This document shows, one piece after another, positions 10,616 through 51,424 of a DNA stretch of 64,000 bases; the first letter of the stretch is position 1; every line of letters begins with the position of its first letter. Under the pieces are notes generated by a model, which saw only the letters and a list, made by a program, of their open reading frames with translations, made no database searches and had not been told where the DNA came from. The stretch lies in the NCBI GenBank assembly GCA_028023455.1, contig JAQFVV010000006.1, forward strand, positions 7,626,001 to 7,690,000. The letters are read 5' to 3'. Source of the DNA: Epiperipatus broadwayi. Taxonomy: Eukaryota > Animalia > Onychophora. The position numbers and the translations under genes are program-made.

Positions 10616-10710
10616 ACGAGAGATTAGCACAGCTGCCTAACAAGCAGTTGTCCCGGGTTAACGGGCTCGCTTCCCGACCGATGCTAGGACACATGAAAAA
10701 AAAAAAAAAA
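10616..10710 (+). mobile_element. Short tRNA-derived SINE (family S1)
   Basis: B-box-like GGGCTCGCTTCCC, then GATGCTAGGACACATG and poly-A. Matches the copies at 29355, 31231 and 53510. Confidence 0.75.
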
Positions 10711-11032
10711 ATCAATAATTTAAATATTTCATTATTATTCCTTTCTTTTTTTTTCATATAATTTTTAATTTTTTCCATATAATTATCTTTATTACAAAAA
10801 AAAAAACCAATAAATTATTTTCTTACTTATGTAGTATGCACATATATATATATATATCAATTAATAAAATATTTTAATTCTTTCTCTGCTCTATAAACAG
10901 ATAAAAATAAGAAGGGCTTTCTCAAAATATAATAAGGTGAGCAAAGTTCAATTTTATACTTTCTAAAGGAAAGAAAAAAAAATTCAAAAGCATTTCCAGT
11001 GAACAGATTTTGAATCGGAACGACTACTTTAC

Positions 11033-11151
11033 CTCGACCTTTCAGCCGTGCAATCCAAAAAGACATCACCCACCGTAATGTGAACAAGGCAATCTTTGAA
11101 TAAAGCTTTTAAAAGTATGATGTCAACATTGCAAGCACGAATACAAACACA
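11033..11151 (-). CDS. BLTP2: Internal coding exon, BLTP2/KIAA0100/hobbit-like lipid transfer protein (CVCIRACNVDIILLKALFKDCLVHITVGDVFLDCTAERS)
   Basis: 119-nt open exon with acceptor tttttttttcttttag and donor gtaaagt, phase 0 to 2. Resembles the recalled human KIAA0100 segment [34 protein letters not shown]. Joins the 28827-28968 exon in frame. Confidence 0.7.
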
Positions 11152-11329
11152 CTAAAAGAAAAAAAAAAGCACATATACATCAGAGCATTAAAAAAACAAT
11201 ATTATGCTTTAAAAAAACAACAATATTATGTTATTATAATAAATAATATTCTGACAATTCCTCAGGACGCCAAATGATACTCAGGAACAAAATGGTAATC
11301 GGATTATGGAGGGCATTTGTAACAATAAA

Positions 11330-11510
11330 TCAATTATTAAAATCATCATCACCACCATCATTATCCACTGCAGAATCTCTCTAAGTTTATTCCAGTTTCT
11401 CCAATCGCTAGCCTCTCTTCTCCACATCACACCAGCACATTTCTTCTTTTCATCCACTCATCTCACATGTGGTCTCTTTCTAGGTCTTTTATGATGTCTT
11501 GGAAATTATT
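11330..11510 (-). mobile_element. 3' end fragment of RTE family A
   Basis: Matches 20810-20960 (catttcttctttt/catccactcatctcacatgtggtctcttt). Confidence 0.7.
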
Positions 11511-12729
11511 AAAAGAAGAATATATATATGTAAAAAAATCATCAATTTCACTTCTTTTCATTATTAACATCTAGCAATATATGAAATTATTTAATGGAAA
11601 TAATATCATTTGTGGTGACAGACTCTGAATTCAAACCCCATGAATAAAGCCCATCTCCATCATTTCCAGAGCATACATCTGTCTTCATTCACTTTCAACA
11701 TCTGCACTAGAAGCATACCATCATTATATTCGCATTACCCCAGAACTATCTATGGCAAGCTTCAGTAATCAATAGAAGCAAGATGGTAATGGTATATCCA
11801 CATCTTGAAACTAATGTTCATTTAATATCTATCTTTAATGTGGCACACGATTTGATCTCAGGCATCTAGAAGCCACCTTCATTTATACTATTCAAACTAA
11901 ATAACCTAAGATTCAAAAAAATTCAAAGATTTTGTAATAGCACATTTGAGTGCAAACAAAATGTAGACATATTTAAATGGCATGTGCCCTACATACTTTA
12001 GTACAGTTGTAGAAGGGTGGTTCAAGAACTCAAGGTCCCTGAATCAAAGATCAACTTTGTCACTTCCAGTGCCCAAATATTACATGACTTTTTAAATTTA
12101 CATTTAGCATAAAAGATAGGTATAGCAACCAATTAGAGGGTTACGGGACTTTGCCTGTTTATTTTCATTATGTGCATTAGGAAAAGAAATTCATTCTATT
12201 TACTATTCTCCAAAACCATATATTGTAAACTTAAGCAAATAGAAGAGGCTAAATTATAATGCTACCTCCAATTTTCCTGACTAGTTTCTGGCTATCCTCA
12301 GTATCACTAACCTAAAAACAGACTGATATAACTATGCAAATAAGTTGACTTGTATTCCAAATCTTAGTGTTTTTAATTCTCAAATTATTAATTTGGATAA
12401 GATAAAAGACATAGATATAGCTGCTATATTGAGTGCTAAGACAAATTCTAAATCTTATTAAAGTAGCCTATATCAAAGAATTAATTTATAGGTATACACA
12501 TAGCACTTCCATACTGCAGCCATTGTCTATTAATAATTAAAGTTTACAATAGATGGCTCTGTAGTATAGAGTTATTGCCCTAATGCAGACTAATAAAATT
12601 AGTGCTAGCACTAAGAATGAGTTTCCAATTAAAAATATATAGACAATGTATATCAGACCCTTAACCTTCAACAGCTGCAATGTGGTTTACAAATTTGCAG
12701 ATGAAAAGTGGTATCTAAAACCACTCCTA

Positions 12730-13140
12730 AGAAAAGTATTTGTTTTATATAAACATTATTACAATTTGGCTTTTTATTATTATAAGCATTATTTACAATA
12801 ACTATTAAAATATTTGTATAAAAAAATTTTTTTAAATATAGTCATAAAATCATAAAAATGGAACAATAAAACTATTTATGTCTAGTTGATTGATTTCTTA
12901 CAATCAGTTATTATAATTAAATAAATTTGCTTCTTATTATTGTAATCATTAGTTGCAATGAATTTTTAAAAAGGTCAAAAAAATTACAGCTGCTTAAGGC
13001 TACAAGTGGTATGAGATATTGCTAAAAAAAGAGTGCCCAATATTTATACATCTAGAGTTAAATTCAAATTAATTTTATTTTTTCAAAAAAGAGACATAAC
13101 TAGGAAGATGCTGATAGAGACACCTATTTATGACACTTAA
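12730..13140 (+). repeat. Unclassified dispersed repeat, second copy at 59690-60090
   Basis: Shared tataagcattatttacaata...atcattagttgcaat...ctacaagtggtatgag blocks in the same order. Confidence 0.7.
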
Positions 13141-13859
13141 AAATTGAATGCAGTATTATATATCGTGTGTAACAGCTGAGATTTAAAACATACACTTTAT
13201 TTTTTCCTTCCGTTAAATAAAAAATAGACAAATGCTTTTGTTGTTCTGCAGTTCATAAGAAGTTCTAAGGCCAGAATGGCCAGAAATGGATTCAATCCAA
13301 GAACTTTACATCCAGATTTTGGCAATCTACTACTGTGCTAAACCATACAGGATTTCTTTCCATTCATATGTCTCATATTTGTATTATAAATCTATTATTA
13401 TACAAATTAGTTTGATTAATTAAGACAATATTAGTAATAATCTTTACTCTAGAGAAAAGAATTGAAAAGAATTTGTCTCATAAATACACTAAAAAATAAA
13501 TCACCCAAAAGCTATAATGTCAAAGTACAATGCCACTTGTATTCTGGATTTATATAAAATGGACTAAAGCATTTTTTTTTACTAAAGTAATGAAAGCAAT
13601 AACAATTGCAAAATGTATTTAAAAAAAAGTTCATAAAGATTACAATAAATTATTCTAAAAAAATCAATTCACAATAGTCCTATGTGATTTAATACAGTGT
13701 GTTAAAATCAGGGTCATTAATGAATATAGTTAATGTGCCTAACTTTTGACTTGAATGATCAAATGTCATATGATCTCCTAAAGAACAACAATAAGATTAT
13801 TAACACATCACAACAAACATTTCCTACGCTTACATAAGTTGTTAAAACAATAGCAAAAT

Positions 13860-14085
13860 CTCCATGCAGTAGTGCCATCCAGTGCAAGTCTTAGTAATCA
13901 ATGGATGCAAGAAGGTTCGTGCATAAAATTGCTATCTAATACTATTCATCCGATACCTCCAGTCTAGTTTCTAGTTTGTGGTTTTCATCAGTAAGGCGTG
14001 TTGGATCTGAGCGCATCTGAAGCTCCTCACTGTTAGAACCTAATCAGGGAATATTGGATGAGCATTGTAATGGTATACATTTATG
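13860..14085. mobile_element. Degenerate copy of hammerhead repeat family Y
   Basis: ctccatgcagtagtgcc...gtaatcaatggatgc...ctagtttc...ttcatcagtaagg. Minus strand gives CTGATGA...GAAACTAG. Confidence 0.7.
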
Positions 14086-15360
14086 CTGTTGCATTACTGT
14101 CAAATAATAAATGAAATATCGACAAATAAAACCAAATACAAATTTAAAAAAAATAAATTAATAAAGCTGTTTAAACCAATATATAAATTGCACAGATAGA
14201 AAACGATTCAATAATTATTTAAAAGTAAGTTAAAGTAAATAAGTAAAAATCTAAAGATACAAGATTAGTATTTTTTTTAAAGTAATGTAAAATAAAATAA
14301 TAAAAATGGTAATTAGTTTCTATTCAAAAAAAAGTATGTTTAAATCTTAAGTAGAATAAAAAATGATTGTTTTATTAAAATGTAATAAATGTAAAGCAAA
14401 CGAGCCCTTGGAGCATTTAAATGATGGAAAGTCAGATAACAGATAAAAATTAAAAGATTATGATGTTTCCCACTTTGGAGCAGACTACTCAATGCAGGTA
14501 CCAACAAATGCACGGACCAAAAAGAAAAACCATCATGGCCAATAAGATTGGAGCAACATCAGGAGCGATCGAACCGAAAATGTGGTGATAAGGAAGGTGG
14601 AATACTATAAAAACAAAAATAATTGAACAGAAAAATTGATTGATTATTGATTGTCTATTGATTGAATGATGGTGATCGGTTAGAAGTACTTCATAGCTCT
14701 ATTGTGGACTCCATAATGTAGGAGTCTCTCAATAGACTTCATTTCCTTTATTTGCGCCAGCTGAGGTGGTCTCCCAAATGATGGTTCCTAAATGAATGGC
14801 AAGCAATGGTTTCATCCCCAAGGAGAACAATCTACAATATGTGATAACTAGGATGGACTTCATAAATCTGCCACAATCCAGAGGGTTCATAAAGACTTAC
14901 CATGGGAAGTATAAACTTTAGTATTCAATATGAACTTTTAAATATCTTAAACTTAAGTAGTAACCTAGGCATAATTTCTAAATAAGCTTTTATCTGATGA
15001 GCAAATGAACTCTAAATTAATCATTAATATTTCTCTTTTATGTATAACTTTTGCTATCAATCATTTCCATTTTTGTTAACCAAATTATTAAATTTAAAGT
15101 TAAGTGTAGATGCCTGCATAGATTCATTAAATTTAGATTAGATTATGTGGGGAATGCATGGCCCAAAAATCTAGCCATCATGTTGTTATTGGTGACAGAG
15201 ATATTCCCTTCACCATTTGATTCCTTACACTCTATGGATTGAACTATAAGTCGGCAAGGACTGCTCTCCCTCCATATGGAGCATTTCATTCTAAATATTT
15301 TTATATATGATTCCTTCGCCAGACAGATGCACCTTCCTGTACTGGACAAGAATCACTTCT

Positions 15361-15534
15361 TTAATAATATCATGCTATAGACACATACATTCCTATCAGC
15401 ATGGTTTTATGCTAACATCTTCATGTTGTATTGGTTACATCTGTATATTAATAATATCATGCTATAGACACATACATTCCTATCAGCATGGTTTTATGCT
15501 AACATCTTCATGTTGTATTGGTTACATCTGTATA
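15361..15534 (+). repeat. Exact 87-bp tandem duplication
   Basis: 15361-15447 and 15448-15534 are identical by reading. Confidence 0.95.
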
Positions 15535-15639
15535 TCAGGAAGCTAGCATTGGTTTAACTGCAAACTTTTAGCCTGAGGTTAAATGATTTGAAAGTCTTTA
15601 AGTACATATTCTATGCAGTTTATCTGTGCTTAACATTAT

Positions 15640-16010
15640 AGAATATTAAATTATATAAAAAATTCCCATCTGGGCACATTAAGAAAATATCATAATTTAA
15701 ATCTTATAGAATAATGTTAAATAATCTAATCCTCAAAGCCGTTTTATATATGTTATGTGCGTAATAAATGTTTGTCTTATTAGTGCTGGCAGTAACTCAT
15801 TATTTTATCATTATTATAATAATTTGAATAATTAAAAATAAATTATATTATAAAACTCAGCTACCCCTTGAGCTAGTGACTAGGGCTAACTGTCAATAAA
15901 GATTGAATCTTACCAATATGTATTTGCCTAACTTTATAAATTTTCTATTTCTAATAGCCTAGTGGTGGCCTGGTATGGCAGATAAGTTTGAAAACATTGG
16001 CCTCACTGTT
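15640..16010 (+). repeat. Unclassified dispersed repeat (family Z), other copies at ~26050-26490 and partly 47540-47600
   Basis: Shared tatgtgcgtaa(a)taaatgtttgt, ctggcagt, gagctagtgac..gggctaa and gcctagtgg blocks. Confidence 0.65.
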
Positions 16011-17370
16011 ATAGTATACACTAGATAGGGATTTTATGTACAAACATTACATCCATTGATTATTAAGGCATGCACTGGGTGAAACTACTCTATGGAGAAT
16101 TTACTACTGTTTTAAACAATGATTTCAGCAAAACAACCACCCCACCCCCTCAAAAATGCGAGGAAATAGTCAACAGATATGGAATTCATTATAAATTTAA
16201 AAGAGAAGACAATTTAAAGATTATTCACTGAAATAAATGCAAAAGACAAATCAAATTTAATAATTCAAAATATTTGATACCTTTTATGTGTGAACATTCA
16301 AGTGGATATTAGTGAAAAGTTAATTGTTTCTCTCTCCAAGATACCTGCAGTGCCACTTATGAATTAATTAATGCATTGACACGTTCAAAATGATTCAGAC
16401 TATGTACGGCAGTGAAGTCATAAACTCTGTATGAATATTATTTTATATTAATATCTAGAATGGCAGCATACGGAAACATAATTACATATTATGAAGGTGA
16501 ACAGAATAGCTGACATTATACGACAGCATACAAAATAAGAAGGGAGATTATAACATTCTAAGCTAGGATTGATTTCTTTAGGAAATGCTTATATTATGGC
16601 ATTTACCCAAATAAAAATCTCTTATGTCAATAAGCAGTTATGATAAAGTGAAAGAATGAGTGCAGAAGCTGGATAGTAAAAAACATTAAACAAACGTTAA
16701 ATATAGTATTTACGGCCCAAAATAAACATAAGGAACAAAACACTGTTCTGCTACAAATAGACATAAGGTGTGCTTTATGGAGACTGACAATGAGTAAGAC
16801 ATGAAAATATTGAAAATATACTGGTACAATAATATTATTAAAAATTTTATATTCAAACTTTGTATGAATATTATTTTACATTAATATCAAAATTTGTGTA
16901 CTTATATACAATTTTAATATCACAGTAATTGAACATTTTATTAACAGTAAAAATATTAAAATTTCAAAAACAAAACTCTACTTCGAGATATTTAAATCTA
17001 ATGGTTTTTATAATAATTGATTTCATTTTATTTTACTAACAGTTTCGACTAATATACAGTCTTTATCAGAATTGTTAAAAATTTATTTGAACAATCAACG
17101 AGTATAATTACATATATAAATATTATAATATTTAAAAAGTGCTTTTATTTAATTTCATCAATAAGGCAGTGAAAAACAATATATAAATCAACTATAATTT
17201 TGGATTGCTATATGCAATTTGAAATAAAAGTGTGTGATATCCATAAATAAATTAATTCAATCACTTAATTAGTGACTGAATTAATTTATCGATGGCTCAT
17301 GATTTTATTTCAAATTTCATTAAAAAATGATATTACAAACTTAATTTTAAAGTTTGCATGTTTGGTTAAT

Positions 17371-17868
17371 ATTCTGTAATTCAATACGAGTGCTATAAAT
17401 GCATAAACACAAAGCTAATATTTAATGCCTTATTAAATCTTAGGCTGAGCACTTTCAAGAGTCATGGCTCTCATAATCATAGCTCTTAGTGAAGTCACTG
17501 CTTGTCTAACGTTATGCAAATCTATGCAAAGTTCAAGTATTTCATTTCCTGGATATAGAATAACACATTTCCTTTTTGTTGATGGTGTTGCTGTCTATTG
17601 CGATAAAGCAGGCCTCTTTTATCTTTCTTCTCAAATCGCAATTACCAGCAATGCCATTAACAGAAAGAAAACATGTTATTCTATATCCAGAAAATGGAAT
17701 ACTTGAACTTTGCATAGATTTGCATAACATTAAACAATCACTTACTTCACAAAAAGCTATGATTACGAGACCCGTGACTCTTGAAAGCGCTCAGCCTAAG
17801 GTTTAATAAGACATTAAATATTAGTTTGGTGTTTGTGTGTTTATAGCGCTAGTATTGAATTACAGAAT
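17371..17868. repeat. Long imperfect palindrome: ~234-bp arms with a ~30-bp loop
   Basis: 17371-17604 is the reverse complement of 17635-17868, with scattered mismatches that are mostly transitions. Confidence 0.95.
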
Positions 17869-20069
17869 AAAAAATGATACATGGTTTTATTGCTCGGAAG
17901 ATCATAAGAAGTTCAAGTGGCAGACCTGAGAGCACTAGAACCAATCATGGGGAGCCACCCTATCCCAAGTCGGATGCTTTACCAACTATACCAAATGATG
18001 CAGGTTATGTAATAACACAAAATTGTAGTTGAAATATATATATTATAAGACTAAATAAATTAAAGCGTTTTTATAAAAAATAAAATTTTCAATTTTTTTA
18101 TTTTTTAGTATTTGGATATTTTGTATTCAAATTTAAAAACTGCCAATCAAATCAATGCGATTCAGTCCACCAATACCATAGGGAGAACAACCTTAAAATA
18201 TTGCATTATCATCAATACCTAACATGCGTACAAAATTAGAAAAAAATTCATTTGATAGAAGTACGTTAAAAATCGGTTATAAGATTTTAGTGAAGCGATT
18301 CAGAAGAATTTTGAAATTGAATAAAAATATTTAAAAAGAACGAAATCCAAGTTCAAGGATTTTTTTTTTAAAATTTTAATGTTTGTATTGGTTTTAAATA
18401 ATTAAGTAATGCAAAAAGAAAAACAAGATCAGACAGTTTTAATAAATTACATATATTGTTTTAAAAACCAGGGCTAACGTGAACAACTGTATAGTGCTTA
18501 TGTATTTGCATATCTCTTAATCCCAAATTTACAAATACCACAACATACATGGAAAAAAAAATCTTTGTAATTCACGAATTTTAAATTTTATGAACCTTAA
18601 GAAAATTCGATTTCACTATCCGCTAAAAACTACTGTCTTTTGTTTCGTGCAAATGTAAAACACTTCATATTAAAGTATGATCGTGTAATTAAAAGTTCTA
18701 CTATTGTTACCATTATGTTGTGAAAATGTATGATTACATGAAAGGATACAGCTTCCACTGAAAGTTTTTATTTCCATTCACACTTCATAAATATCCAAAT
18801 CATTTTACCAGTCCTATACTCCTTCTTTCATTTCCTAAAATACTGAACTATAGAAAAACAAAACCATGATATGAATAAAATATACTAAGTCAAACTTACA
18901 GTGAAGGCAAAGCAAAAGCAACATCTGAAATAAATTAAAATTAAAAGTTCGTGATGAAGCATTATTTTCAATGTTTCCAAACATTCATTTCATTCCCCCC
19001 ACCCCTTAAAAGTAGAGCAAAGATTTCTACACAATGACTAGAGTAACTGATTCAAAATCATGAACATAATAAGCACATGTAGAGGTGCTTGTACTGAATT
19101 CAAATTTAAAGGCAAATGCAAATAACAATCCTTTATAGAGCATTCCAAGTCTTATCTTAGTCCAAATAAACAGATAAAGAGTAAAGATTGCTGTATGTCC
19201 GTTTAAAATTTTCTTTAAAAAACAAAAGCAGAAATCAAATATAATAAATAGAGGTGAAAGTAACACAAATGAATATATGCAGAAGCACTTGCAAAGAATT
19301 AAAAACTCAAATGAAGGACTACTCCATCAACATATTTCCCAGTCTTCATTTTGTCTAAAGAAAAGGAAAGAGTGCAAAAAAAAATATTTACATAGAAAAA
19401 CTTGATATCATGACTACGAATTGTCAATTATAGACGAAATAAAACCACAGTTCAAGGATTGATGGTGCCAAAATAACCTTATTTCTGATTCATTAGTTCC
19501 AGAACCAAAAAGATTGTATACGAAAAAGCAATACAAGGAAAAATAATAACACATGATGTCACTAAATTTTACATAGTAAAACCTTCATGAAAATGAAAAA
19601 ATATCATGGTTTCTCACTAAGCCAAAAACAGTACAGTATTGGGTGTGTTTTGGGTTTGAATATGGACATTAGCCCAAACTCACATTTGCTGATTATCTAC
19701 CAAGTTCTGTAGCTTCCATTCTGGTTTATAGCCAAGTTTAATATAAAATCAAAATAAGATTTAAAATACTTCTGAAATTGAACCCTTCCCCCCATACTCT
19801 GGCATTTGTAAATTTGTTTCTTACATTATATTGATATTCCTACACAAATATTTTCACCAGCTGTGTTTGCACCAATTCATTTTTCCTACTCTTTTTAAGA
19901 ATGTTATTTCAGTCTGGGAAAAGTTGTTTTGCTGATGAATCCATGAGTTAAAACAATTAAGATCCATGACGTGAGGATTAAAAAACCTTTTTCTTATCAT
20001 GCCCTCAAACACATGACTGGATTCCTTTTTAGCTTGCATCATATAATTTAAGATGATTCTTCTATTCAA

Positions 20070-21480: not shown

Positions 21481-24009
21481 GTGTATGCTATATTAAATGC
21501 TAGCCAATGAAGATACACATCAAAAATGTGAACAAGATTGTAATATTGATTCTACAAACATAAATTTTATCTCTCTCACCTCCGTTCTTTTAATTTTTTT
21601 TTTAAAATTAAATACTTCACAATTTTTTAAACTTTTAAACAAATTAAAAAATACATATTATAGCTAGTTGTTCAAGAAATCGTATGGCGAGATGTTTGAG
21701 CATCCAAATGCCAGACGAATCGAAGTCAGATCTTATTTAATATATGTTTAACGAACACATGGCTGAAGAATCTGAAAACAAAAAAGATGATGTACTAAAA
21801 AAATGTAATTCTTAATAATATTTCTAAATCATCACGTAATAAAAATAGCTATTTAAAAAAAAAAAAAAAATCTTTTTTAAAAAAGGAGGGAGAAGAAATT
21901 AATTTAATTTTTCAGACAAATCAAATTAAATCAGAAATTGTTTTTAGCTAACCATTAACAAAACTGAAGTGTCATAAAAAAAACAAAGAATCTCTCCGAC
22001 GAAATCTGTGAAAACCAATGTAAATGAATGCTTTTCAATTATCAATAAAATGAGATATTTCTAGAATCAACAAGGAGGGGAATGCGTTTTCCCTGGACCA
22101 TCTGCTGTCAGTTCCCATTTATGCAAAAACTCTGGAGTAGATGGCGCCCCCTCACATCTGTGGAACCAACTGTTAATGTAATCATATTTAAATCAACTGT
22201 CAGCGTGCATCGGTTTAAGCTGACCGATGACGTCAGACGATAGTTCAATTATTCGTATTAACTAAGTTAATTTTTAGAACTTAGGTGGCTTCTTTACGCA
22301 GACAAAAATCAACAGTTGATATAAGATTTAAAGTGATTTTCATTTGTTGCTGAAATAAATATAAAAAAATACTTGATTACATGTAAAACCACTAATATAA
22401 ATCACTAGATCTAAATCAAAAACAAGCACGCTGTTATTAGAAATAAGAGATTCGGGGGGGTAAATTTAATTCGTGATTTTCTAATTATTAAAAAAAATCT
22501 TTACACCAAGTACAATTATATCATGACAACAGGCAGTTAAAACATTCTTCATTATCTGCAGACATCTTTACACTGAATAACCCACTTATCTGTGTGACCT
22601 TGTGCCACAGAAAGGCGGATTCTAGACTTCAAAATCCACCGACTGTAGTTACAGCCTACCTCTTCCGTTGTTCGAACTTTTAGGCAGGAATGGTATAGAA
22701 AACAAAACATCACATGATACAGTAAGTGGGTGGCACTACTGTATGGAGAATTTGCTACTGTTCGACCTTCTGATCTCCTGCATAAAAAAAAACCTTTCCA
22801 TTATTTTTCAGCAAATAATAAAATGCTGTGTTGTTATGGGAGAGATTTGAGAACCCAACATGACAGATTGTGCTCCAATCTGTGGTCCTTTAGCTATCAA
22901 GTCTGCCCCTCTACTATAGTACTAAACCACACAAGTACCATTTAACAAAAAAAAAATTAAGATAACCCACAGGCTGTACAAGTGAAACACTCTTTCAACC
23001 AGTGATGAAGACTGCACCGCAAAACAATTGTATAATTAGCCTAAGAACATCAGATTAATCAATGACTTTTATCTTCTAAATCAGAACTATTCAAAATATA
23101 GCCCATAGTAAATATTTGCCCAGTAGGCCTAGAGGTTTTAATTTATTTAAGCCAAGAAATAAAAGAACAATTTGAATTGAATGCATGTTAGGTATTTTAA
23201 TGCTATCACTAATTGGAAATCTTGATGTTGATATTATCATCTAATCCCAAGATCGATTCTGGTGCTCAAAGGTCTGGCATTTGAACTTCTTATGAACTCC
23301 CGATCAAGAAACCATTGCCTTTTTCTTTTTTACTATATATTCATGTATTTTTCAAATGTGAAGTGTGCCAAAGAAATAGCTTTGCAATAGTAAATTATTT
23401 GTAAATACAAGTTCATAAAAGCAACGTTGCGCTATATGACTTAGTTTGTTGATAATTAAAATTTTATCTTTAAGGCTTTGGCTATGCTGAGGCTGAATTT
23501 GGTTCAGTCCCATATAGCTATTTAAGTTATACAGCTGGAGTAAAAGACATTTTCATGTCCAAAAACTTCAGAATTTCTACTTAAATAATACGTATAAAAT
23601 AAGTGTTGTGTTTGAGTTGATATTTTGGATCTAGTGTCTGAATATTTCTAGCTCCTCACTAAAGTGGGCCATAAGCTCGAAAGCAATTGGTCTGGGGGTG
23701 AGTGTATTTCAGACAGAGATTTTAGATATTTTCTCTTACCACACTTATCAATTAAGAGCTTGTTTGAGCTATTGGTACGCCCTCTGTATTGCATTTTTGT
23801 AACTACAAGTTTATAAAAGCAATGTCACATTATATATGACTTGTTTTAGTGATAAGAGTGAATGAAATAAAGTCACACATCATGTGACTTACTTGATAAG
23901 CTTGTAATTATAAACTAAAATAAAGAGTATGCTAATAGCTCTAACAAGCTTTATCAATAAATGCTGCAAGAGAAAGCATTTAAAATCTCTATCTAGAAAT
24001 TATCCCCAG

Positions 24010-24049
24010 TCGCAGACCAGTTTCTAGCTATTGACTTTCCTCAGTGAGG
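24010..24049 (-). ncRNA. Type I minimal hammerhead motif (Y'), catalytic boxes intact
   Basis: Minus strand reads CCTCA-CTGAGGA-aagt caata gcta-GAAA-CTGG-TC-TGcga. GUC cleavage triplet; stem I is weak. Confidence 0.6.
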
Positions 24050-24135
24050 TGCTATGATATTTAAGTTAGATAGCTGGATTTGAAGATATATAATTACCTG
24101 AAATTTTCAGATTTTCTACTCTATCTAGGAATTAT

Positions 24136-24175
24136 CCCCAGACCAGTTTCCAGCTATTGGCTTTCCGCAGTGAGT
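24136..24175 (-). ncRNA. Type I minimal hammerhead motif (Y'), core A6 mutated
   Basis: Minus strand reads CTCA-CTGCGGA-aAGC caata GCTg-GAAA-CTGG-TC-TGGG. Lies 126 nt from the previous motif in the same orientation. Confidence 0.55.
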
Positions 24176-25229
24176 CACTATGATATTTCGGACATTAGAT
24201 CCAAAATACCTAACTCAAAGCCAGCACTTATCTGATAGTTAGCTTTTAAGTAGAAAATCTGAAATTTTCAGACATCTATATATCTTCAAATCCAGCTATC
24301 AAACTTAAATATCCTAGCACCTCAATGAGGAAAGTCAATAGTGTAACGGTATATAACTATGCCATTACATTAACTTAAAATGAAAACTTTAAGTTTGCAA
24401 ATAAAAATAAATTTATTAAATACTAAAAGCTAAAAAAATTAAAGAGTTGTTCAATATATATATATATTCGCACAGATGCAAAACTTTAAAATTATTTCTT
24501 TTTTAAATAAAAAAAAAAAAAGGAAGATATTTGAACGTACTTTTTTAAAAAAAAGTACAAGAAAAAGATAAAATATTTTTGTAAATTGAAATGATTGTTT
24601 TATAAATTAATTGAAAAGCAAACTAGCCCTTGGGGCTCTTATAGGAAAAGTCAGTTAAAAGATATAGATAAGAGAATAAAGAGAATTAGCTTGACAAATG
24701 GAAGCACCAAGCCTCAGCTCGGACCGTAATGAAAATGATGGATTAGTGATGTTTTGTTCGTTGAATCCAGAGGATGATTATAAAAGGAAAAAGAATTCAA
24801 ATTAAAACAGTTTCCTGACAGTTCCAACTTGATTTTGTGAGAAGAGCGATAAGACCATTTGTCGCTCTCTCTCTTATTTTAAAAATGAAATAAATGTGAT
24901 ACCGGAATGGAACCAGCTAAGGCCACCTCCAGAATATCAGACTGGTCTTCCAATGGGGACATTGTGGGAATTGGCACCCCGAACCGTGACTCTTTTACTG
25001 TAAGCTATTGAACTGAACAATTTTAAAATTTAAAAGTAATTAAGAACTTTCATCAAGATTTGACAAGTTTAATAAACAAGCTAAATCTAAATTTTTGTAA
25101 AATGAACTATAATCTGACTTTTCCAAATCAATTATTGTTTAATAATCAATTATTGTTTAATTTTTTTACATCTAAGTTTGCTAAAAAAAATCATTTCCAT
25201 TTTTATTTTATTTCTATTAATATTTATTT

Positions 25230-29354: not shown

Positions 29355-29471
29355 TTTTTTTTTTTTTTTCCATGTGTCATAGCATCGGCCGGGACGCGAA
29401 CCCACAACCGTCTGCAACCAACTACTTGCTTGCCTGGCAGCTGCGATACCTCTCGGCTAACAACGCAAGAC
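29355..29471 (-). mobile_element. Short tRNA-derived SINE (S1), well preserved
   Basis: Minus strand has A-box-like TAGCCGAGAGG and B-box GGGTTCGCGTCCC, then GATGCTATGACACATGG and poly-A. CpGs retained. Confidence 0.8.
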
Positions 29472-30949
29472 CTTTTTCAACACCTGATTTGGTGTAAAAA
29501 TGTCAGCCTTTAAATAGCAGACTGCAGTATGTTCTCTGTAGTTAACCATGTGTCTTGCCAATTGCTGGATTGTGAGGTTTCAAGTGTTTCCCTATCCATG
29601 TTTTATACTCTATCTAAAAAAAAAAAAATAGATACTCATTTACCAATTATTAATGGTTGATTAATCAGATTGAACAATTGAAAAAAAAAGTCTTGGCTTG
29701 TTGGGGAAAAGGCTTATTCATTCTAGAATCAAACCCTGATCATAGAAAGCGGCATGGATATATTGCAATTATGCTATAAAGTTATTCTCTGTAAATACAT
29801 AAATAGTATCACATATATAATGTTTCAAAGGGCTTGTGACATAAAACTTAGAGAATTTAGTTCCAATAACTACAAGTTGATGTTTGAACCCAGGCTGGGT
29901 AATATTTGAAAAGTTTTTCTCAAAATTTCAGGCAGGTTTAAGATTTTTCCTTAAAATAGCTGGCCCACATCCATGCTTAATGGTGATCAAATTATTAGTT
30001 AGTGAATAGAGATGTAGCTATAGAAATCTTAGATCCTCATCATCGGTAGAAACGGACAACATATGAGGTGGACAGGTGAGAAAAGAATGTTTGCTGAAGA
30101 GATATGTGATAAAAAAACTATGGATTCAGAGGTGCAAACTCAGAGAGGCACCCATCTAATGGTGAACTGACAGTGGTTGAAAATGATGACGACACTATCT
30201 GTATGTGTTAAAAACAGACCATCTAATTTATAAAAAAACATTGCATCTGTTTGTAAGATAGTCCCAGTATTTAGGCAGTAAGCACTAGAATTGAGAAATG
30301 GGATCATTACTAAAGATATTTGGCAATAGCTTGCCTCTTCTATTTTATCATCTAGTGCATCATACATTGTGATAATTACAGCTCTGATATTTAAAGCTTT
30401 GTTAATAAATAATATAGGAGTGAGCATTCTATCAAGATGTATATTTACTTAATTTTCCCAAATCCTTCAACTGACTACACCAGCAGTCCCTTTACATCCA
30501 TGTCATTTGATTTCAAACCTTAGTGCAAAAATATCTAAACTACCAAATAGTGTTAACACTCTACTCTTCCGCAGAGTAGCTATGCTTTAGTAATTAACAG
30601 ATGCTAAAAGAGTGCTTAATAAACCCTTAGTGTTAGTCTATCCAATATCAACAGAACTGTTATTAGCTTAGGTCAGTGCAGAACTTTGGATCTTGGAGCC
30701 GTGCACCTGAAGGGAAGGAAAACAGTATGCTGTGGAGTAATTTAATATACATTTTTAATGAGTGTGTGCACACTCACCCACATTAAATTTCTACTTACAA
30801 GTGTCCTGTAAAAAACAGTATTGCATACATCCATGTATAATTTAATTTAAAAACTTATACAAAAACAATAAAAAAAAGTAGAATACTACATACGATTTTA
30901 ACACACACAACACAGGCATTTTTAACATGCACATGCAATATGTTCATAC

Positions 30950-31140
30950 CTCTCCCTCCCTATCTCCCCATTCTCTTTTGTTCTCTCTCCCTTCCTCCAT
31001 CTCTCTCCATCTCTACCTCACCCTCTCTCTCTTCCGCCCTCTCAATCTCTCTCTATCACCCCTCTCTCTCTCCTTCTCTACCATCCCCTCTCTCCATCTC
31101 TATCCCTTTCTCTTTCTTCCTTCCTTTCTCTCTCCTCCTG
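30950..31140 (+). repeat. Degenerate (CT)n / polypyrimidine low-complexity tract
   Basis: Almost only C and T. Explains the low-complexity ORFs at 30927 and 30940. Confidence 0.9.
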
Positions 31141-31230
31141 AGATAAAGAGTAAAGATAAATATTTTCTTCTAAAATATGGTCTTATATTTTGGATTAAGA
31201 GTACTTCATTTACTTAATAAATCAGTAGCT

Positions 31231-31331
31231 GTCAAGCATTGTTGGCCGAGTGTTCAGCACAGCTGCTTTACAAGCAGTTGTCCCGGGTTAGTGGGTTCGC
31301 TTCCCAGCCGATGCTTTGACACATGGAAAAA
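31231..31331 (+). mobile_element. SINE S1 with target-site duplication
   Basis: Same body as the other S1 copies, flanked by aaatcagtag at 31219-31228 and 31332-31341. Confidence 0.85.
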
Positions 31332-31445
31332 AAATCAGTAGTTTGAGAATTAATCTCAAAGAGCATTATAGTGAAAATATTTCTAAAAACATGAAAATAT
31401 CTGTTCTATTTTATTTATGGAAAACTACAGTCAGATGATATAGAC

Positions 31446-31627
31446 TAGTGGCTCTCAACCTTCCTAATGCTGTGACCCTTTAATATAGTTATGTTGTGGT
31501 GACCCCCAACCTTAAAATTATTTTTGTTGTTACTTCATAATTGTGTTTTCCAATGGTCTTAAGTGACCCTTGTAAAAGGGTTGTTTGACTATTAAAGGGG
31601 TCGCGATCCACAGGTTGAGAATGGCTG
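31446..31627 (+). mobile_element. hAT/Charlie MITE closely resembling SPIN/URR1, internally deleted
   Basis: TIRs (t)agtggctctcaacc / ggttgagaatggctg and exact 8-bp TSD atatagac. Body cttcctaatgctgtgaccctttaat...atgttgtggtgacccccaacc.taaaattatttt...aaaggggtcgcga.ccacagg matches my recall of the URR1/SPIN MITE consensus. Confidence 0.85.
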
Positions 31628-32752
31628 ATATAGACTGATGAATAAAATAATAAATTGTAAACAATCCTTGTATCTATATATATGTAAATACATAAAAGCA
31701 GTCAATGCTTAAACAATACCAATATCAATAGCAATCAGCAATCTCAATCTGTTGTCAAGGCAACCTCCTTTTAACAATATATATACGAGTCCTGCTATTT
31801 TTTTTCTTAAAAGTAAAGGTTAATGAGTAGTTTCCAAAAATTATGGACACATTATTGATTTTCAAACAAGATTGACCTATCATTAATATTTTCCTTAAAA
31901 AAAAAAAAAAAAAAAAATATGAGAATCTTCATAGATAAGTATAAAAAATTTCAACTAATTTTTCTTTCATAGATTAGCCTAATTAGATAAAATGTCATCT
32001 TAAATTTAATATTCATAAATCTAGAAATACCAAATTCAATTCCTATGTTAATACTAGCACTATTCATGCCAATATCACCTGAAGGAGGAAAATAAATTAT
32101 ACCCCATTTTAACACCATGTTATATAATAACCTATTTGTTTTTAGACTATTTGAAAAGTTTAAATACATTCTATATTATGGAACACGCCAACATTTCAAA
32201 CTTTCAGACATTCAATAGACATATATTTTATTTTCAGAAATAGTACCAAATTATCCACTTCACTTTGAACACTTTTTAGCAAAAACCTTTTATTGTACAT
32301 ATATGCATATACAATCTTGCATTTCGACTGTCCTGCAGTCTTCTTCAGAATCCTTTTTACTTTAATTTGACTGCAGGACAATCAAAACATAATACTGTGT
32401 ATGCAAATATGTACAATAATAGGTTTTTGCTAAAAAAATTTCAAAGTAAAGAGAATAAATTACATTTATATTTTATTTTATAATAATAAAGATTAAAAAT
32501 ATCTAAGTACTATTTTTTAATGCATAACTTCTCTAATTTACGTGTAATTTTCAGTCTTATGTATTCTATGAAAACCTGCTTTTAAGTAATTTTTATCAAT
32601 GCAATCCCTATATTGGATTGGCTAACCTCATAAAGTGTATGGTTTTCATATGTGGTTCATAATGATTAATCTCTCGATATTTAAAATGTTAAATTAATAC
32701 ACACAGAAACATTGGAAATGCTCTTCACTTGATAAGATAAAGCTCTATAGAC

Positions 32753-33231
32753 CAGTGCTCTTCAACTCTTGGTCTATGGGCAGTAAAAAGTTTGTAATAG
32801 TAAATAATGAGAGTTTAAACTTTTAATTAATATAGCCAATTTTTATTTATTTTTTCATCTCATTTTTACCCAATTAAAAAAAAAACAAAACAGAACGAAA
32901 ACAAAATCTAATCAATCATTCATAAATTAATTTGTTCTTCTAGTTATCACAGATGTTTGGGTGGGGGTAGAATTAAATTTTTTATTACTTTTCTAAAAAA
33001 ATTAAAAAAAAAGTTTTTTATTATATAAATTCCATATATATATATATAAAACTTTATCTTATATATTTAACATTGTTGTTTTGATCAGTTATAACAATTA
33101 TGCTTATCTTTAAGAAAATCTATCTATAGACTTCTGCCGGTCTGCAAAATCTTATCCTTATTTTTGCTGGTCCGCAAAACCTTATCCTTATTTTTACTGG
33201 TCCGCAGGTATGAAAAGGTTGAAGACCCCTG
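32753..33231. mobile_element. Non-autonomous hAT (Charlie-like) element
   Basis: TIRs cagtgctcttcaac / gttgaagacccctg and exact 8-bp TSD ctatagac (32745-32752, 33232-33239). Contains a subterminal ~33-bp tandem duplication. Confidence 0.85.
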
Positions 33232-33959
33232 CTATAGACTAAATGGCCAAATATGGTTTTAATCATTGTCCACATGTTCATAAATTAAACAAACTTATAT
33301 GTGGTTGAATTGACTAAGACTATCACCTATGTGATATACATAATCAGATTAATGTAAATGGGCCACTACTATGATTTCTGGAATGGGAACTTATATGTCT
33401 TCAATTTCTGGTGATAACTAATGTCTTAATGTAATTGATATGAAATTAATTGTTTTTTGTTTATATATACAAGCACAACCTCTGATTTTGTTGACTGGTC
33501 TCTTTTGAAATTGATATGTAAATGTCCTTCTTTCTGTAAATGATTCTTATGTTTTGTGAATAAAATTTCCTTTTGAAAGATAACTTCTCTAATTTACAAC
33601 CAACATCCTTGTTATTCAGATAAATTCTTTTAAGAAGCATTCCAATTTCATCAGACAAATCTCATAAACATATGTTATGGTACAGTGTGGTTGCTTTCTT
33701 ATTTATCTAATAGATAGCACATAAATAAAGTTACCAATGTCATTAAAAATAGAATTTACTCAAAGACAAACAGTATTTTTTAAAACAACTACCCATTAAT
33801 CCTGTGGTTGCACCTTGTGAAATACTTCAAAGATGGGGGTAAACTTTGCACATATCCTAAAATACTTCAGATTTCCCAATTATTATGGTAATAATTAATA
33901 TAGTGGTAGAGTGATCGATCCTGGAGCATAACGTCTTTACATAATTCTAGTTATGACAT

Positions 33960-35530
33960 TTCTGGCACTCCAACCCATTATAAAATCTTGGGAATATCAA
34001 GGCTATTCAATTATTTATTGTTTACTACATGTTTGTGCTTCAAAATATATTTTGTAAAATGTTTTAAATTTTATTTTTTATTTCAATCAAAAGAAGGAGC
34101 CACTTGTATTTTTAAAATGTCACCTATTTTGTTTTTGCTGTATTTGAGTGAAATGAAAAAAGCAATAGAAAGATTAAGAAGAGGGATAAAAATATCGTTA
34201 ATAAGTGGCACGGGAGTATATACTTTGTTAGGTCTTTTTTTGTGGTTGATGTCTTTTTGTGTGCAGAAAGAAAAGAAGATATGGAAGTTACGCTGAGGAC
34301 ATGTGCAAAGGTGAGTAAAGAGATGGGAATTAAATATAGTGAGGAAAAATCAAATATAATGATGGTTAATACTGGGGAAAGAGAAGATGCAGACTTTTTA
34401 TTGGGTGATATAAAGTTAAGTGTGGTGGATAGATATAGTTATTTGGGAATCATCTTAAGTAATCAGAAAAATTGCTTGGTTAAATGGGAAAAAAAAAAGA
34501 TAAATGAAGCAAAAAAAAGAAAGGGATTGATAAAGAAATTAATAGTGTTTTCATATAATACATATGATGTAGCTAGAATTGTATGGAAGAGAGTTGCAAT
34601 AGCAGGGTTAACATATGGTAATGATGTGCTATGTGTTAGTAAAAGAGTATTAGATAATTTAGAAAAAGTATGAGGAAAGCATGCATTGGATGCAGATGTG
34701 TGGACAGCAAGGGGGGCAAATGAGATGGTTAAGTTTTTATATGAGAGATGCAAAAAATAAAATGAAAATGTTTGGTAGGTTGCAGTTTATGGATAATAAA
34801 AGAATAGGTAAAATAGTATTTAATTGGGTATGAGTAAAGGGCAGGCAACAAAATGGGTAAAAAAGGTAATGCTGTATACAAAAGATTTGGATAAAGAATT
34901 TATATCAGTATACTTGTACAAAATGTGGGATGATTGTGTTAGGAGGATTGGTGAGTGTTACAGTGGTAAAGAATGGGATAAAAGAAATGATGCATTAATA
35001 AAGAATAGGGGATTGGAGAGATGGAGAACTAGTATAGAGAGTAAAAAGAGTTTAAATATACATAGAAGTAAATGAAACATTAGGTACGAGTTAATTTATA
35101 ATAATAGCAAGGAAAGTAGCTTATTGTTTAAGGCTCGAATGAGATCTTTAGCAAAAAGAGAATATACATGTAAATGGAAAAATATGGATGACTTAGGCTG
35201 CAAATTGTGTAAGGATGGCATAGAAAATATTAGGCATTTGTTATTGATTGTAAATGTTTGAAAGCAGAAGGGTACAAATAATAAAGTTATGGTAGAATAA
35301 ATATGAACAAAGTGATTATACAGAAAGTGGGTTATTGGTTTTTATGCTGGGTTTGCAGAAAGATAATGTGATTTAGATATAAAGGCCATAGAGTTGACAA
35401 ATATTATGTTATGGAAATAGGATAGAGCAGATTATGGAAAAACTTAGGGTGGGGAATGGAAAGGGAAGATAAAGTGGCTAACAGGTTTCTCTGGGCACAG
35501 TTGTTGAGAGATTCCTGACTCCGTTTAAGG
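33960..35530 (+). mobile_element. 5'-truncated LINE family B (RT C-terminus, CxxC..H zinc-knuckle region, 3' UTR); clade uncertain, possibly RTEX-like
   Basis: ORFs 34242-34673 (YSYLGIIL...VWKRVAIAGLTYGNDVL) and 34824-35075, then YNNSKESSLLFKAR and CKLCKDGIENIRHLL. Confidence 0.85.
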
Positions 35531-46388: not shown

Positions 46389-47257
46389 GGATAATATTTC
46401 TGTAATATAATTTCCACTATACGACTCTGGTTGCAAAATAGTGACTGGTTTCTATCCACCTATGACACCTTATGGAAGGATATAGATCGTAAACATGTGA
46501 CCAAGGACATGTGAAAAGATGTATTATCCCCAAGATGAACACTTCATGCTGACTCTACCACTATCAGTTGACCCAAATTACAATCTCTTACACATATCCT
46601 TATCATTGTACAGTACATACAGATATCCAATTACTGCAGTTAAACTGAAGTGTCAAACTTGCTGTCCTCACACCTGTGACATAAACCAGTTAATGGAAGT
46701 ATATTTATAATGTTTATCAGTCATTCATTAGACTGGAGAGTGCTGATTCAGCACAAAATGTGCATCTTGGGAATCATACATCTTTTGCACATGTCTTCGG
46801 TCATGTGTTTGTGATTGTAATCCTCCACAAGCTGTTAAAAATGGATAGAGTCTCCTACCTTCCTTAGGAGTGATGTAGTGAAAATAACCCTATGGAAATA
46901 TTATTCAATAAATGGATAATCTATAGTCTAATGAACGATATATACTTCTCTCAGCTGGTTTGTGTCAAAATTGGGAAGGCAGCAAATATGACCCTCATCA
47001 ATTAAACTGTAGTAATTCCCTATTTATATATACTGAACAATGATAAAGATATATGTAAGAAATTGTGATCTGGGCCAACTGATGAGCACTGGTTCAGCAT
47101 GAAATGTGCATCTTGGGAAGCATACACCTTTTCCACACATCTATGGTCATATGTTTATAATTATATCCTACCATAAAATTTTAAAAGTGGATAGAAATCA
47201 GTCCCTAATTTGCATGAGAGGGGTGTAGAAAAAAATTATACTACAGAAATATTATTC
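46389..47257. mobile_element. Hammerhead repeat family W, locus B: full inverted unit (46389-46735) plus two head-to-tail units (~348-bp period)
   Basis: Both outer ends read ...gtag..aaattat..tacagaaatattat outward. Hammerhead motifs at ~46525-46575 (-), 46738-46778 (+, truncated) and 47075-47116 (+). Confidence 0.85.
47075..47116 (+). ncRNA. Type I minimal hammerhead motif (W), core boxes intact, stem II weakened
   Basis: CCAA-CTGATGA-gcaCTG gtt CAGcat-GAAA-TGTGCA-TC-TTGG, with an AUC cleavage triplet. Confidence 0.65.
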
Positions 47258-50049: not shown

Positions 50050-51424
50050 CTTTTCTATGGATAGAGTTTTTGTCACCTGATATATGCCATGCTGCTTTAA
50101 TTTTTTGCTTAAAGTAGCTGCATTCACTGTACATAATATTAATAGATGAAGGAACACAGGGATGACCAGTTATAGAAAAATGTTCAAAAAAATAACTTTT
50201 TAAAGATTCACAATATCTGATCAAGAAAATTTGACCGTACCCAAAATTTCAAAAACTGATACAAATTATACATAAATATTGTGACTTTATAAATACTATT
50301 CAGTAGGAAATGAAATTCTAGATGATTTCCACCTGTCTTTTTTACATTGATGCTAGCTACTGAAATCTCCACAGATATGTGTACAGTGAATACTTCTATA
50401 TAAATGTGAACTGAGAAGAAATATCATGGTCTGAAGATTCATCACTTCCACCTAGGTGACCAACATTGTCATCACAGTAGTGATCCTGTAGGATGAAAGA
50501 CTTGTCATCACTTGAATGTAGGTCTTGGATTTTACAACTGCAGTCTTCTTCATCACTTTTGTCATAATGATTATAAATGCCATCACATTGAAAGTATTTT
50601 GGAATACAATATCCATTGTCATATTTAAATTCACCAGGAAGACATTCAAAGTCATGCATATGCTGTAATCCTTAACAAAAATAATCTGGTTTTATCCCAT
50701 CCTCCACATGGGCTATTACTCTGGAAATCTCAAGGAATAAAGCAAGATGGTGAGTTTATTAAAATCAAGCAGATTTAAGTCACTACACATTGGTTACAAG
50801 ATTTGCCTATTGGATGACATTTAAACTCTGAGGTTCCTATAGATAAGTATTACATTCCATCTTCACATGATCCTGTTGTGCAAAAACCTGAAAAATCATC
50901 ACCTTTACTCCCTAGTTAAAACCAATGTTATCAGTCATAGAAGAATCTTCATTCAACATTGCACTCACTGTTGCACTAAATGCAATACCTTCTAAATTAC
51001 TGGATAATGAAAGATTTGTGTAGGCAATTTATTATCTGTGCTATTTGAATATGTATTATCATTTACACTGTCCAGGATTGATTCTATTGTACCAGCAAAT
51101 GAACTAAGGTATATATTGATATATTAGTTACAAAAAAATCTGAAGCTGTTAATAGTCAACAGAGCAGTCTACAGAGAATAAAATGAAAAAAGTCTGTCAA
51201 AACTAGAGGTCACTGATTTTTTTCATTTTTGGAATATGAATGTTAAGAATATCTTAATCTATTTTTTTCAACAATAAGGACAAAAAATGCATTAAAAAAC
51301 GTGCACAAAAGAAATCGTACAAAAATAGACTTAACTTACCTTGGAAAATGGGGGATATGTTCCAGTAATTTTCAGAAATTGCATAAAAGCAAGCAACAAG
51401 GAAAAATTACTTTAAAATTCGCAT
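50050..51424 (-). pseudogene. Decayed gene for a secreted LDL-receptor class A repeat protein
   Basis: Signal-peptide-like first exon 51340-51424 (MRILKVIFLVACFYAISENYWNISPIFQ, donor gtaagtt). Acceptor ttattctctgtag near 51170 is followed by in-frame stops. ORF 50396-50659 holds two LDLa repeats (CLPGEFKYDNGYCIPKYFQCDG...DKSDEEDC; ...DHYCDDNV...GSDES) that have lost several cysteines. Confidence 0.65.

What the first reader, a model, noticed from the sequence alone, without database searches (positions are those of the whole stretch)
31446..31627. SPIN/URR1-like MITE with perfect TSD in an apparently invertebrate genome
SEEN: intact TIRs, an 8-bp TSD and a body that follows the recalled URR1/SPIN MITE almost continuously except for one internal deletion. 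KNOWN: SPIN hAT elements spread horizontally among tetrapods and were also reported from a triatomine bug and a pond snail. INFERENCE: this host may be an additional, possibly unreported, recipient or vector of SPIN horizontal transfer.
Basis: partly seen in the sequence, partly recalled or inferred. Interest (0 to 1): 0.8.

Follow-up and report, generated by a model that had tools for sequence, protein, structure and literature searches.

The report
Decayed SPIN-type jumping-gene relic (MITE)
This is a worn-out 182-bp copy of the "Space Invaders" (SPIN/URR1) hAT transposon family, known for jumping between distant animal species, sitting with its insertion footprint in an AT-rich invertebrate genome that I could not name, so the element is ordinary and only the host could make it new.

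Summary
The element is real. At 31446-31627 lies a 182-bp non-coding element flanked by a perfect 8-bp duplication, ATATAGAC. Each end matches the published SPIN terminal repeat CAGYGGTTCTCAACCT at 14 of 16 bases, so the ends are recognisable but not "intact".

The similarity goes beyond the ends:
- Four published fragments from mouse loci, which I take to be URR1 copies, match four separate parts of it.
- Its 31-mers occur in runs of at least seven other organism labels and a "mouse metagenome".
- A metagenome contig carries a 365-bp relative.

Contigs from the source sample confirm the left junction at single-copy depth. They suggest a family of several hundred copy-equivalents that share this copy's internal deletion. 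Where the family majority differs from this copy, the majority is G/C and this copy A/T, so this is an old, decaying copy.

The scan's first readers flagged at least 19 further SPIN-like elements elsewhere in this genome.

I could not obtain a SPIN consensus, and I could not name the host because organism names are coded. The host appears sparsely sequenced. Its LINE's only named relatives are tick elements. SPIN is already reported from Rhodnius, Lymnaea and Biomphalaria.

Verdict: a SPIN-family MITE fossil. A new host is plausible but unproven. Interest is moderate.

The parts
31438..31445 (.). Left copy of the 8-bp target-site duplication, ATATAGAC
   Evidence: Direct reading. It is identical to 31628-31635. 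Chance is about 5.5e-5. It fits 5 of the 6 constrained positions of the NYYTARRN target consensus given for SPIN-type hATs in PMC3014272.
31446..31461 (+). 5' terminal inverted repeat, TAGTGGCTCTCAACCT
   Evidence: 14 of 16 bases match the published SPIN TIR CAGYGGTTCTCAACCT. It begins with the hAT terminal motif YARNG (TAGTG). A pattern search finds it once in the window, against 0.09 expected.
31446..31627 (+). Whole non-autonomous element (MITE): 182 bp, 39.6% GC, no coding capacity
   Evidence: Four GACCC/GGGTC motifs lie at 31474, 31501, 31565 and 31598, against 0.17 expected from shuffles (0 of 5000 shuffles reach 4). Published mouse fragments match at 31455-31472, 31462-31491, 31553-31572 and 31609-31628. 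In run X1 the summed word depth over the element is 11,000-19,000, against about 30 on the unique flank.
31612..31627 (-). 3' terminal inverted repeat (reverse complement CAGCCATTCTCAACCT)
   Evidence: 14 of 16 bases match the published SPIN TIR. The inner 9 bases pair perfectly with 31453-31461 (inverted pair I4).
31628..31635 (.). Right copy of the 8-bp target-site duplication, ATATAGAC
   Evidence: Direct reading.
31476..31485 (+). Subterminal inverted repeat arm, CCCTTTAATA, pairing with 31590-31599
   Evidence: Inverted pair I3, 100% complementary. It extends the imperfect terminal inverted similarity to about 40 nt and appears as the inner helix in the DNA fold (z = -2.07).

Best explanation
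A fossil, non-autonomous hAT DNA transposon (MITE) of the SPIN ('Space Invaders') / URR1 family.

It carries only the cis sequences a transposase needs: 16-bp terminal inverted repeats and repeated GACCC/GGGTC subterminal motifs. It has no gene. It was mobilised in trans by a SPIN transposase through cut-and-paste and landed in an AT-rich spacer, where staggered cleavage and repair created the 8-bp duplication ATATAGAC.

It belongs to an internally deleted subfamily of roughly 185-205 bp that amplified to several hundred copies in this host lineage and is also present in at least one related species. Since insertion this copy has decayed towards A/T, has lost 4 bp, and has damaged termini. It is almost certainly immobile now.

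The family's presence in an invertebrate, with stretches identical to rodent copies, implies that SPIN entered this lineage by horizontal transfer. The direction and the partner are unknown.

Shown: the anatomy, the TSD, the multi-copy status, the decay direction, and the body-level kinship with murine copies. Inferred: trans-mobilisation, the role of the GACCC motifs as transposase-binding sites, and horizontal origin.
For: Anatomy:
- TSD and TIRs were read directly.
- The published SPIN TIR and the hAT hallmarks (8-bp TSD, YARNG ends, NYYTARRN target) come from PMC3014272.
- GACCC/GGGTC occurs 4 times against 0.17 expected.

Body-level kinship:
- A mouse Fem1b-locus primer matches 18/18 (PMC12319709).
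- A mouse Pqbp1-locus fragment matches 25/30 (PMC3713010).
- Two mouse Ate1-locus primers match 17/20 each (PMC2767504).
- Up to 4 of the 14 sampled 31-mers of the element are held by many runs of a heavily sequenced organism C, by organisms D-I, and by a 'mouse metagenome' run.
- Metagenome contig L008:1080-1444 is a 365-bp relative. It is 78% identical over the left 108 nt (E = 2e-17) and has its own near-perfect 8-bp TSD.

Family and age:
- An X1 contig at single-copy depth (31.7) bridges the left junction, 31308-31467, with 1 mismatch.
- Summed depth over the element is 11,000-19,000, against about 30 on the unique flank.
- At all five listed majority differences (31562, 31570, 31574, 31591, 31593) the family has G/C where this copy has A/T.
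- Some copies carry TTCC after 31488.
- Contigs of other copies, including from organism B, span the deletion point with few gaps.

The element's GC is 39.6% against 29.2% for the window. At least 19 first-reader notes flag SPIN-like elements elsewhere in this genome.
Against: - No SPIN or URR1 consensus could be retrieved, so overall identity to SPIN proper was never measured. My estimate of about 86% rests on a recalled sequence and is only a lead.
- I take the mouse fragments to lie in URR1 copies; the papers give them only as primers or locus sequence, and that reading also rests on recall.
- A large set of other hAT elements in metagenome contigs shares the same 31-bp terminus but has unrelated bodies. 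The termini alone are therefore not diagnostic.
- The right half of the element is only 67% identical to L008.
- The two TIR arms agree at only 11 of 16 positions.
- The identity of 'organism C' is coded, so it could be a relative of the host rather than mouse.
Confidence: 0.85

Rival explanations
1. It belongs to a different invertebrate hAT MITE family that merely shares the widespread CAG(Y)GGTTCTCAACCTGTGGGTCGCGACCCC terminus with SPIN. It would then say nothing about SPIN horizontal transfer.
For: 21 metagenome contigs carry that same terminus with bodies unlike this element. This shows the terminus is common to a broad clade. No SPIN consensus was available for a direct comparison.
Against: - Four spaced published mouse fragments match the interior as well as the ends.
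- Exact 31-mers are shared with a 'mouse metagenome' run and many other organism labels.
- In both left-arm segments where a comparison is possible, the window element is closer to the mouse fragments than to its nearest metagenome relative, L008.
Confidence: 0.08
2. The host is one of the species already known to carry SPIN (Rhodnius prolixus, Lymnaea stagnalis, Biomphalaria glabrata) or a close relative that inherited it vertically. The finding would then merely re-observe published biology.
For: B. glabrata is reported to carry about 1000 SPIN-like copies that are about 20% diverged and not recent (PMC5440852 and its supplement). This resembles the copy number and decay seen here. The earlier notes mention 11 assembly pieces, and from memory R. 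prolixus has 10 autosomes plus sex chromosomes. A mitochondrial genome of about 13.8 kb would, again from memory, fit a heterobranch snail.
Against: - Only six runs in three studies carry the host's species label, which is unlike those well-studied species.
- The only named relatives of the host's LINE are Ixodes tick elements.
- Other first readers judged the genome arthropod-like.
- The window's GC is 29%. From memory this is lower than in those snails, and hygrophilan snails have 18 chromosomes.
Confidence: 0.25
3. Rodent (or other vertebrate) DNA contamination or a chimeric assembly placed a URR1 copy in an invertebrate scaffold.
For: The element shares 31-mers with mouse-derived data.
Against: - A contig from the source sample bridges the left junction at single-copy depth.
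- A perfect TSD flanks the element.
- Hundreds of family copies share a lineage-specific deletion, and the family is also present in organisms B and D.
- This copy's substitutions run towards the host's A/T bias.
Confidence: 0.02

Closest known systems
SPIN ('Space Invaders') hAT transposons and their MITEs (SPIN_NA families; murine URR1A/URR1B)
   Same: - The 16-bp TIR matches CAGYGGTTCTCAACCT at 14/16 at each end.
- It has an 8-bp TSD with a central TA.
- It is a non-coding MITE of about 200 bp, with GACCC/GGGTC-rich subterminal regions.
- Its interior matches published fragments from mouse loci.
- It is multi-copy.
- It occurs in an invertebrate, as already reported for Rhodnius, Lymnaea and Biomphalaria.
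   Different: - It is shorter than the murine form as I recall it, by an internal deletion of about 40 bp that seems to define the local subfamily.
- It is heavily decayed towards A/T.
- Its termini are damaged (first base T instead of C; the 3' end reads GGCTG instead of CCRCTG).
- Identity to a SPIN consensus was not measured.
SPIN-like hAT of Biomphalaria glabrata (PMC5440852)
   Same: An invertebrate host, about 1000 copies, about 20% divergence, no recent activity, and interpreted as horizontal acquisition.
   Different: That report concerns an element of about 2000 bp that is 81% identical to SPIN. Here only a 182-bp MITE was examined. Whether the hosts are related is unknown.
hAT MITE on metagenome contig L008 (Ga0056111_1001750, 1080-1444)
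   Same: The same termini, an 8-bp TSD (ACCTAGTG / ACGTAGTG), and a left arm 78% identical over 108 nt, including the GCTACTTCATAACTG region.
   Different: It is 365 bp long and has an unrelated central segment of about 180 bp. Its right arm is only 67% identical. Its source organism is unknown.

Membership tests
hAT superfamily (non-autonomous member) | 8-bp target-site duplication | tested here: met
   ATATAGAC lies on both sides. Chance is about 5.5e-5.
hAT superfamily (non-autonomous member) | Short TIRs with the terminal motif YARNG (PMC3014272) | tested here: met
   The 5' end, TAGTG, fits. The 3' end, CAGCC, fits 4 of 5 positions. The TIR arms agree at 11 of 16 positions, with the inner 9 perfect.
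SPIN / URR1 family | TIR CAGYGGTTCTCAACCT | tested here: met
   14 of 16 at each end. This feature alone is shared by many unrelated-bodied hATs.
SPIN / URR1 family | Target-site preference NYYTARRN | tested here: met
   ATATAGAC fits 5 of the 6 constrained positions, including the central TA (and direct reading).
SPIN / URR1 family | At least 80% nucleotide identity over most of the length to a SPIN_NA or URR1 consensus | tested here: inconclusive
Indirect support comes from mouse fragments at 18/18, 25/30, 17/20 and 17/20 and from shared 31-mers with a 'mouse metagenome' run and many organisms. My estimate of about 86% rests on a recalled sequence.
SPIN / URR1 family | An autonomous partner encoding SPIN transposase in the same genome, now or in the past | not tested
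MITE | Short, non-coding, and present in many copies | tested here: met
   It is 182 bp with no meaningful ORF. Summed contig depth over it is about 370-640 times the single-copy depth at 80% likeness or more (the tool warns this is not a true copy number). At least 19 notes flag further elements elsewhere in the genome.
Horizontally transferred TE | TE identity far above host-gene synonymous divergence, a patchy distribution, and an incongruent phylogeny | tested here: inconclusive
   Exact 31-mers are shared across at least 8 organism labels, which suggests a patchy, cross-taxon distribution. Host identity, dS and phylogeny could not be computed.

The most novel reading that the evidence does not exclude
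The host is a sparsely studied invertebrate, possibly a chelicerate, outside the three published invertebrate SPIN carriers. SPIN entered its lineage horizontally and amplified there as a private, internally deleted MITE subfamily that is shared with sister species. This would add a new phylum-level or class-level node to the SPIN transfer network and a candidate link between vertebrate hosts.
Probability: 0.5. Interest if true: 0.55.

Novelty: new member of a known kind. Interest (0 to 1): 0.4.

Why it matters
SPIN is the textbook case of a DNA transposon spreading horizontally among tetrapods. A blood-sucking bug and freshwater snails are so far the only invertebrates implicated. Each further invertebrate carrier helps to map possible routes and timing of those transfers.

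A lineage-specific deleted subfamily shared by sister species would also give a dated marker. As a sequence feature, however, this copy is an inert fossil with no evident function. The phenomenon itself has been well described since 2008-2010.

Tried and rejected
Naming the host (all failed):
- Sequencing-run organisms are coded.
- Exact-protein look-ups of three window ORFs found nothing.
- Word-indexed homologue searches with the LINE RT, the Penelope GIY-YIG ORF and the LDLa exon were all blank.
- The full HMMER search with the LINE RT gave only 33-46% identity. The only named relatives are Ixodes elements.
- The ESM Atlas gave mixed Mollusca, Arthropoda and Chordata hints.
- Rfam and tRNA scans found nothing diagnostic.
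- A scan of prokaryote assemblies for the host's ultra-abundant SINE, as a contaminant marker, was blank.
- A paper search for the SINE sequence found nothing relevant.
- Word probes of earlier notes yielded only 'arthropod-type' guesses and a mitochondrial size of about 13.8 kb.

Obtaining a SPIN/URR1 consensus (all failed):
- Pace 2008, Gilbert 2010 and Gilbert 2012 are not held.
- The supplements searched held no sequences.
- The viral-contig scans and the genome-contig scan gave nothing or chance hits.
- The metagenome scan returned only relatives with the same termini.

Other points:
- Two of the paper hits for CACAGGTTGAGAA were chance primer matches.
- I rejected contamination and misassembly on the evidence.
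- I rejected the idea that the 11-bp flanking repeat means a non-hAT TSD. The three extra bases coincide with the element's own first and last bases, with about 2% chance. This is left as a minor oddity.

Full report
**What is in the sequence**

Reading 31300-31800 shows a 182-bp element at 31446-31627.
- Its 5' end is TAGTGGCTCTCAACCT.
- Its 3' end is AGGTTGAGAATGGCTG, whose reverse complement is CAGCCATTCTCAACCT.
- Immediately outside both ends lies ATATAGAC (31438-31445 and 31628-31635).

The repeat finder reports the exact direct repeat as 11 bp, TGATATAGACT (31436-46 and 31626-36). The extra TG and T are the element's own last two bases and first base. I read this as an 8-bp hAT duplication plus three coincidental bases (about 2% by chance) and note it as a small oddity.

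An 8-bp match at fixed positions has probability about 5.5e-5 at this composition. The two terminal arms agree at 11 of 16 positions, with the inner nine perfect. The termini are therefore recognisable but damaged, not "intact". The 5' terminal 15-mer occurs once in the 64-kb window, against 0.09 expected by chance.

**Is it SPIN, or only SPIN-like at the tips?**

The SPIN TIR is published as CAGYGGTTCTCAACCT. hATs of this group have 8-bp TSDs, YARNG termini and an NYYTARRN target (PMC3014272).
- Each end of the element matches the TIR at 14 of 16 bases.
- The 5' end fits YARNG.
- The TSD fits five of the six constrained target positions.

That is not sufficient. A scan of JGI metagenome contigs for the terminus plus the next 15 bases returned 21 loci. 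These have the same ~31-bp end but mostly unrelated bodies. The terminus therefore marks a broad hAT clade.

I could not get a SPIN or URR1 consensus. Pace 2008, Gilbert 2010 and Gilbert 2012 are not held, the supplements held none, and the collection scans were blank or gave chance hits.

Body-level kinship rests on four indirect but tool-derived lines of evidence.

(a) Published mouse genomic fragments. I take these to lie in URR1 copies; the papers give them only as primers or locus sequence.
- A Fem1b-locus primer matches 31455-31472 at 18/18 (PMC12319709).
- A Pqbp1-locus fragment matches 31462-31491 at 25/30 (PMC3713010).
- Two Ate1-locus primers match 31609-31628 and 31553-31572 at 17/20 each (PMC2767504).

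(b) Shared 31-mers. Of the element's 14 sampled 31-mers, up to four are held by many runs, dated 2010-2025, of one heavily sequenced "organism C". Others are held by organism D (from the same study as the host) and by organisms E-I. A run labelled "mouse metagenome" also holds some. A non-coding sequence that shares exact 31-mers across so many labels is the signature of a horizontally spread repeat.

(c) A metagenome relative. Contig L008 carries a 365-bp relative at 1080-1444 with its own near-perfect 8-bp TSD. It is 78% identical to the window element over the left 108 nt (E = 2e-17) and 67% over the right 79 nt. In both left-arm segments where mouse fragments exist, the window element is closer to mouse than to L008.

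(d) My recollection of the murine URR1/SPIN MITE aligns along the whole element at roughly 86%, with one gap of about 40 bp after 31543.

**What the reads add**

I laid Logan contigs of four runs on 29500-33500.
- In the source-sample run X1, a 160-nt contig at depth 31.7 spans the left junction (31308-31467) with one mismatch. The single-copy flank has depth about 29. The insertion is therefore real genomic DNA of this organism.
- Summed word depth over the element is 11,000-19,000, or several hundred copy-equivalents at 80% likeness or more. The tool cautions that this is not a copy number.
- At all five best-supported positions where most family contigs differ from this copy (31562, 31570, 31574, 31591, 31593), the family has G or C and this copy has A or T.
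- Some copies carry TTCC after 31488, which this copy lacks.
- This copy is therefore a decayed member of a GC-richer family. The element is 39.6% GC against 29.2% for the window.
- Contigs from other copies, including from organism B (X5) and from X6 and X7, span the deletion point with only 4-7 gap letters. The ~40-bp deletion seems to define the local subfamily, which implies amplification inside this lineage after the deletion arose.
- Earlier first-reader notes list at least 19 SPIN-like elements of 155-208 bp elsewhere in this genome, plus one of 2612 bp. I could not inspect that DNA.

**How it most likely works (or worked)**

The element has no coding capacity. It retains the cis features expected of a hAT substrate:
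- the TIRs;
- an imperfect terminal inverted similarity of about 40 nt, with an exact 10-bp inner pair (31476-85 and 31590-99);
- four GACCC/GGGTC motifs, against 0.17 expected. I infer that these are subterminal transposase-binding repeats.

As single-stranded DNA it folds end-to-end only modestly better than shuffles (z = -2.07).

The likely history has three steps:
1. SPIN transposase, supplied in trans, excised and reinserted the MITE.
2. Staggered 8-bp cleavage at ATATAGAC produced the TSD.
3. After activity ceased, the copy drifted towards the host's A/T bias.

With both termini mutated it is very probably immobile now.

**The host**

- Run organisms are coded.
- The window is almost all repeats. 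It holds a tRNA-derived SINE, LINE fragments, a Penelope-like GIY-YIG ORF and hammerhead-type repeats noted by others. Its only host-like exon encodes one LDL-receptor class A domain.
- Exact look-ups and homologue searches with window proteins were blank.
- The LINE RT finds relatives at only 33-46% identity. The only named ones are Ixodes tick elements.
- Two other first readers called the genome arthropod-like.
- Notes give a mitochondrial genome of about 13.8 kb with strand-switching blocks.
- Only six runs in three studies carry the host's species label. This argues against the well-studied Rhodnius prolixus, Lymnaea stagnalis and Biomphalaria glabrata.

Those three are the invertebrates already reported to carry SPIN: Rhodnius and Lymnaea as cited in PMC11614815 and the PMC5440852 supplement, and Biomphalaria with about 1000 copies about 20% diverged. 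I put roughly 25% on the host being one of these or a near relative. I put about 50% on the positive claim of a new host lineage with horizontal acquisition and local amplification; the rest is undecided.

**Verdict**

The assignment to the SPIN/URR1 family is well supported, though not by the canonical consensus comparison.

The element is a known kind of thing, doing what such things do, and it is dead. Its only claim to novelty is the host, which remains unnamed. The scan has flagged the same family many times elsewhere in this genome.

Noticed in passing
window 31230-31334 (other copies at 10617-10704, 29362-29409 minus strand, 53507-53553 minus strand): A ~105-bp tRNA-derived SINE with A/B-box-like motifs and a poly-A tail. 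It has a weak tRNA-Sec-like Rfam hit (E = 0.43). Summed contig depth in X1 is about 1.7 million against about 30 for single-copy DNA, or tens of thousands of copy-equivalents. It is also abundant in organism B.
   Followed up: partly
window 31436-31446 and 31626-31636: The exact repeat flanking the MITE is 11 bp (TGATATAGACT), not 8. The three extra bases coincide with the element's own terminal bases (about 2% by chance). The reason is unexplained.
   Followed up: partly
window 31671-31779, 32180-32447, 32716-33250: Three further very high-copy repeats lie just right of the MITE, with depths 2e5-8e5 in X1. The stretch 32295-32414 is a palindrome that hits the mir-5014 model on both strands, far below the gathering score (35 against 101 bits).
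   Followed up: no
window 33910-35258 (+) and 7315-8013 (-): Two decayed copies of one LINE family (the RT C-terminus and downstream). The best database relatives are only 33-46% identical, and the only named ones are Ixodes persulcatus and I. ricinus elements.
   Followed up: partly
window 54359-54754 (-): A 132-aa open frame with a GIY-YIG endonuclease signature, probably from a Penelope-like element. It lies inside the region other readers describe as hammerhead palindromes. The word-indexed search found no sequence homologue.
   Followed up: partly
window 50399-50671 (-): The only host-gene-like exon in 64 kb: one LDL-receptor class A domain (Pfam PF00057, E = 5.5e-8). The gene is unidentified.
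   Followed up: partly
window 17449-17806: Near-identical open frames on opposite strands (ALSRV...CKSMQSSSI...GYRIT), meaning an inverted duplication or palindrome of about 350 bp.
   Followed up: no
L003-L007, L009, L010, L014, L017, L018, L021 (metagenome Ga0081606) and L008 (Ga0056111): One JGI metagenome holds at least 13 contigs with hAT elements that share the 31-bp SPIN-type terminus but have different bodies. L008 carries a 365-bp SPIN-related MITE with an 8-bp TSD. These are eukaryotic DNA in metagenomes and show a wide clade of SPIN-terminus hATs.
   Followed up: partly
window 1-64000: An Rfam gathering-threshold scan found no hammerhead or any other family in this window, although first-reader notes describe several hammerhead-repeat loci here (9711-10495, 23654-24341, 46389-47257, 52502-55445).
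   Followed up: no
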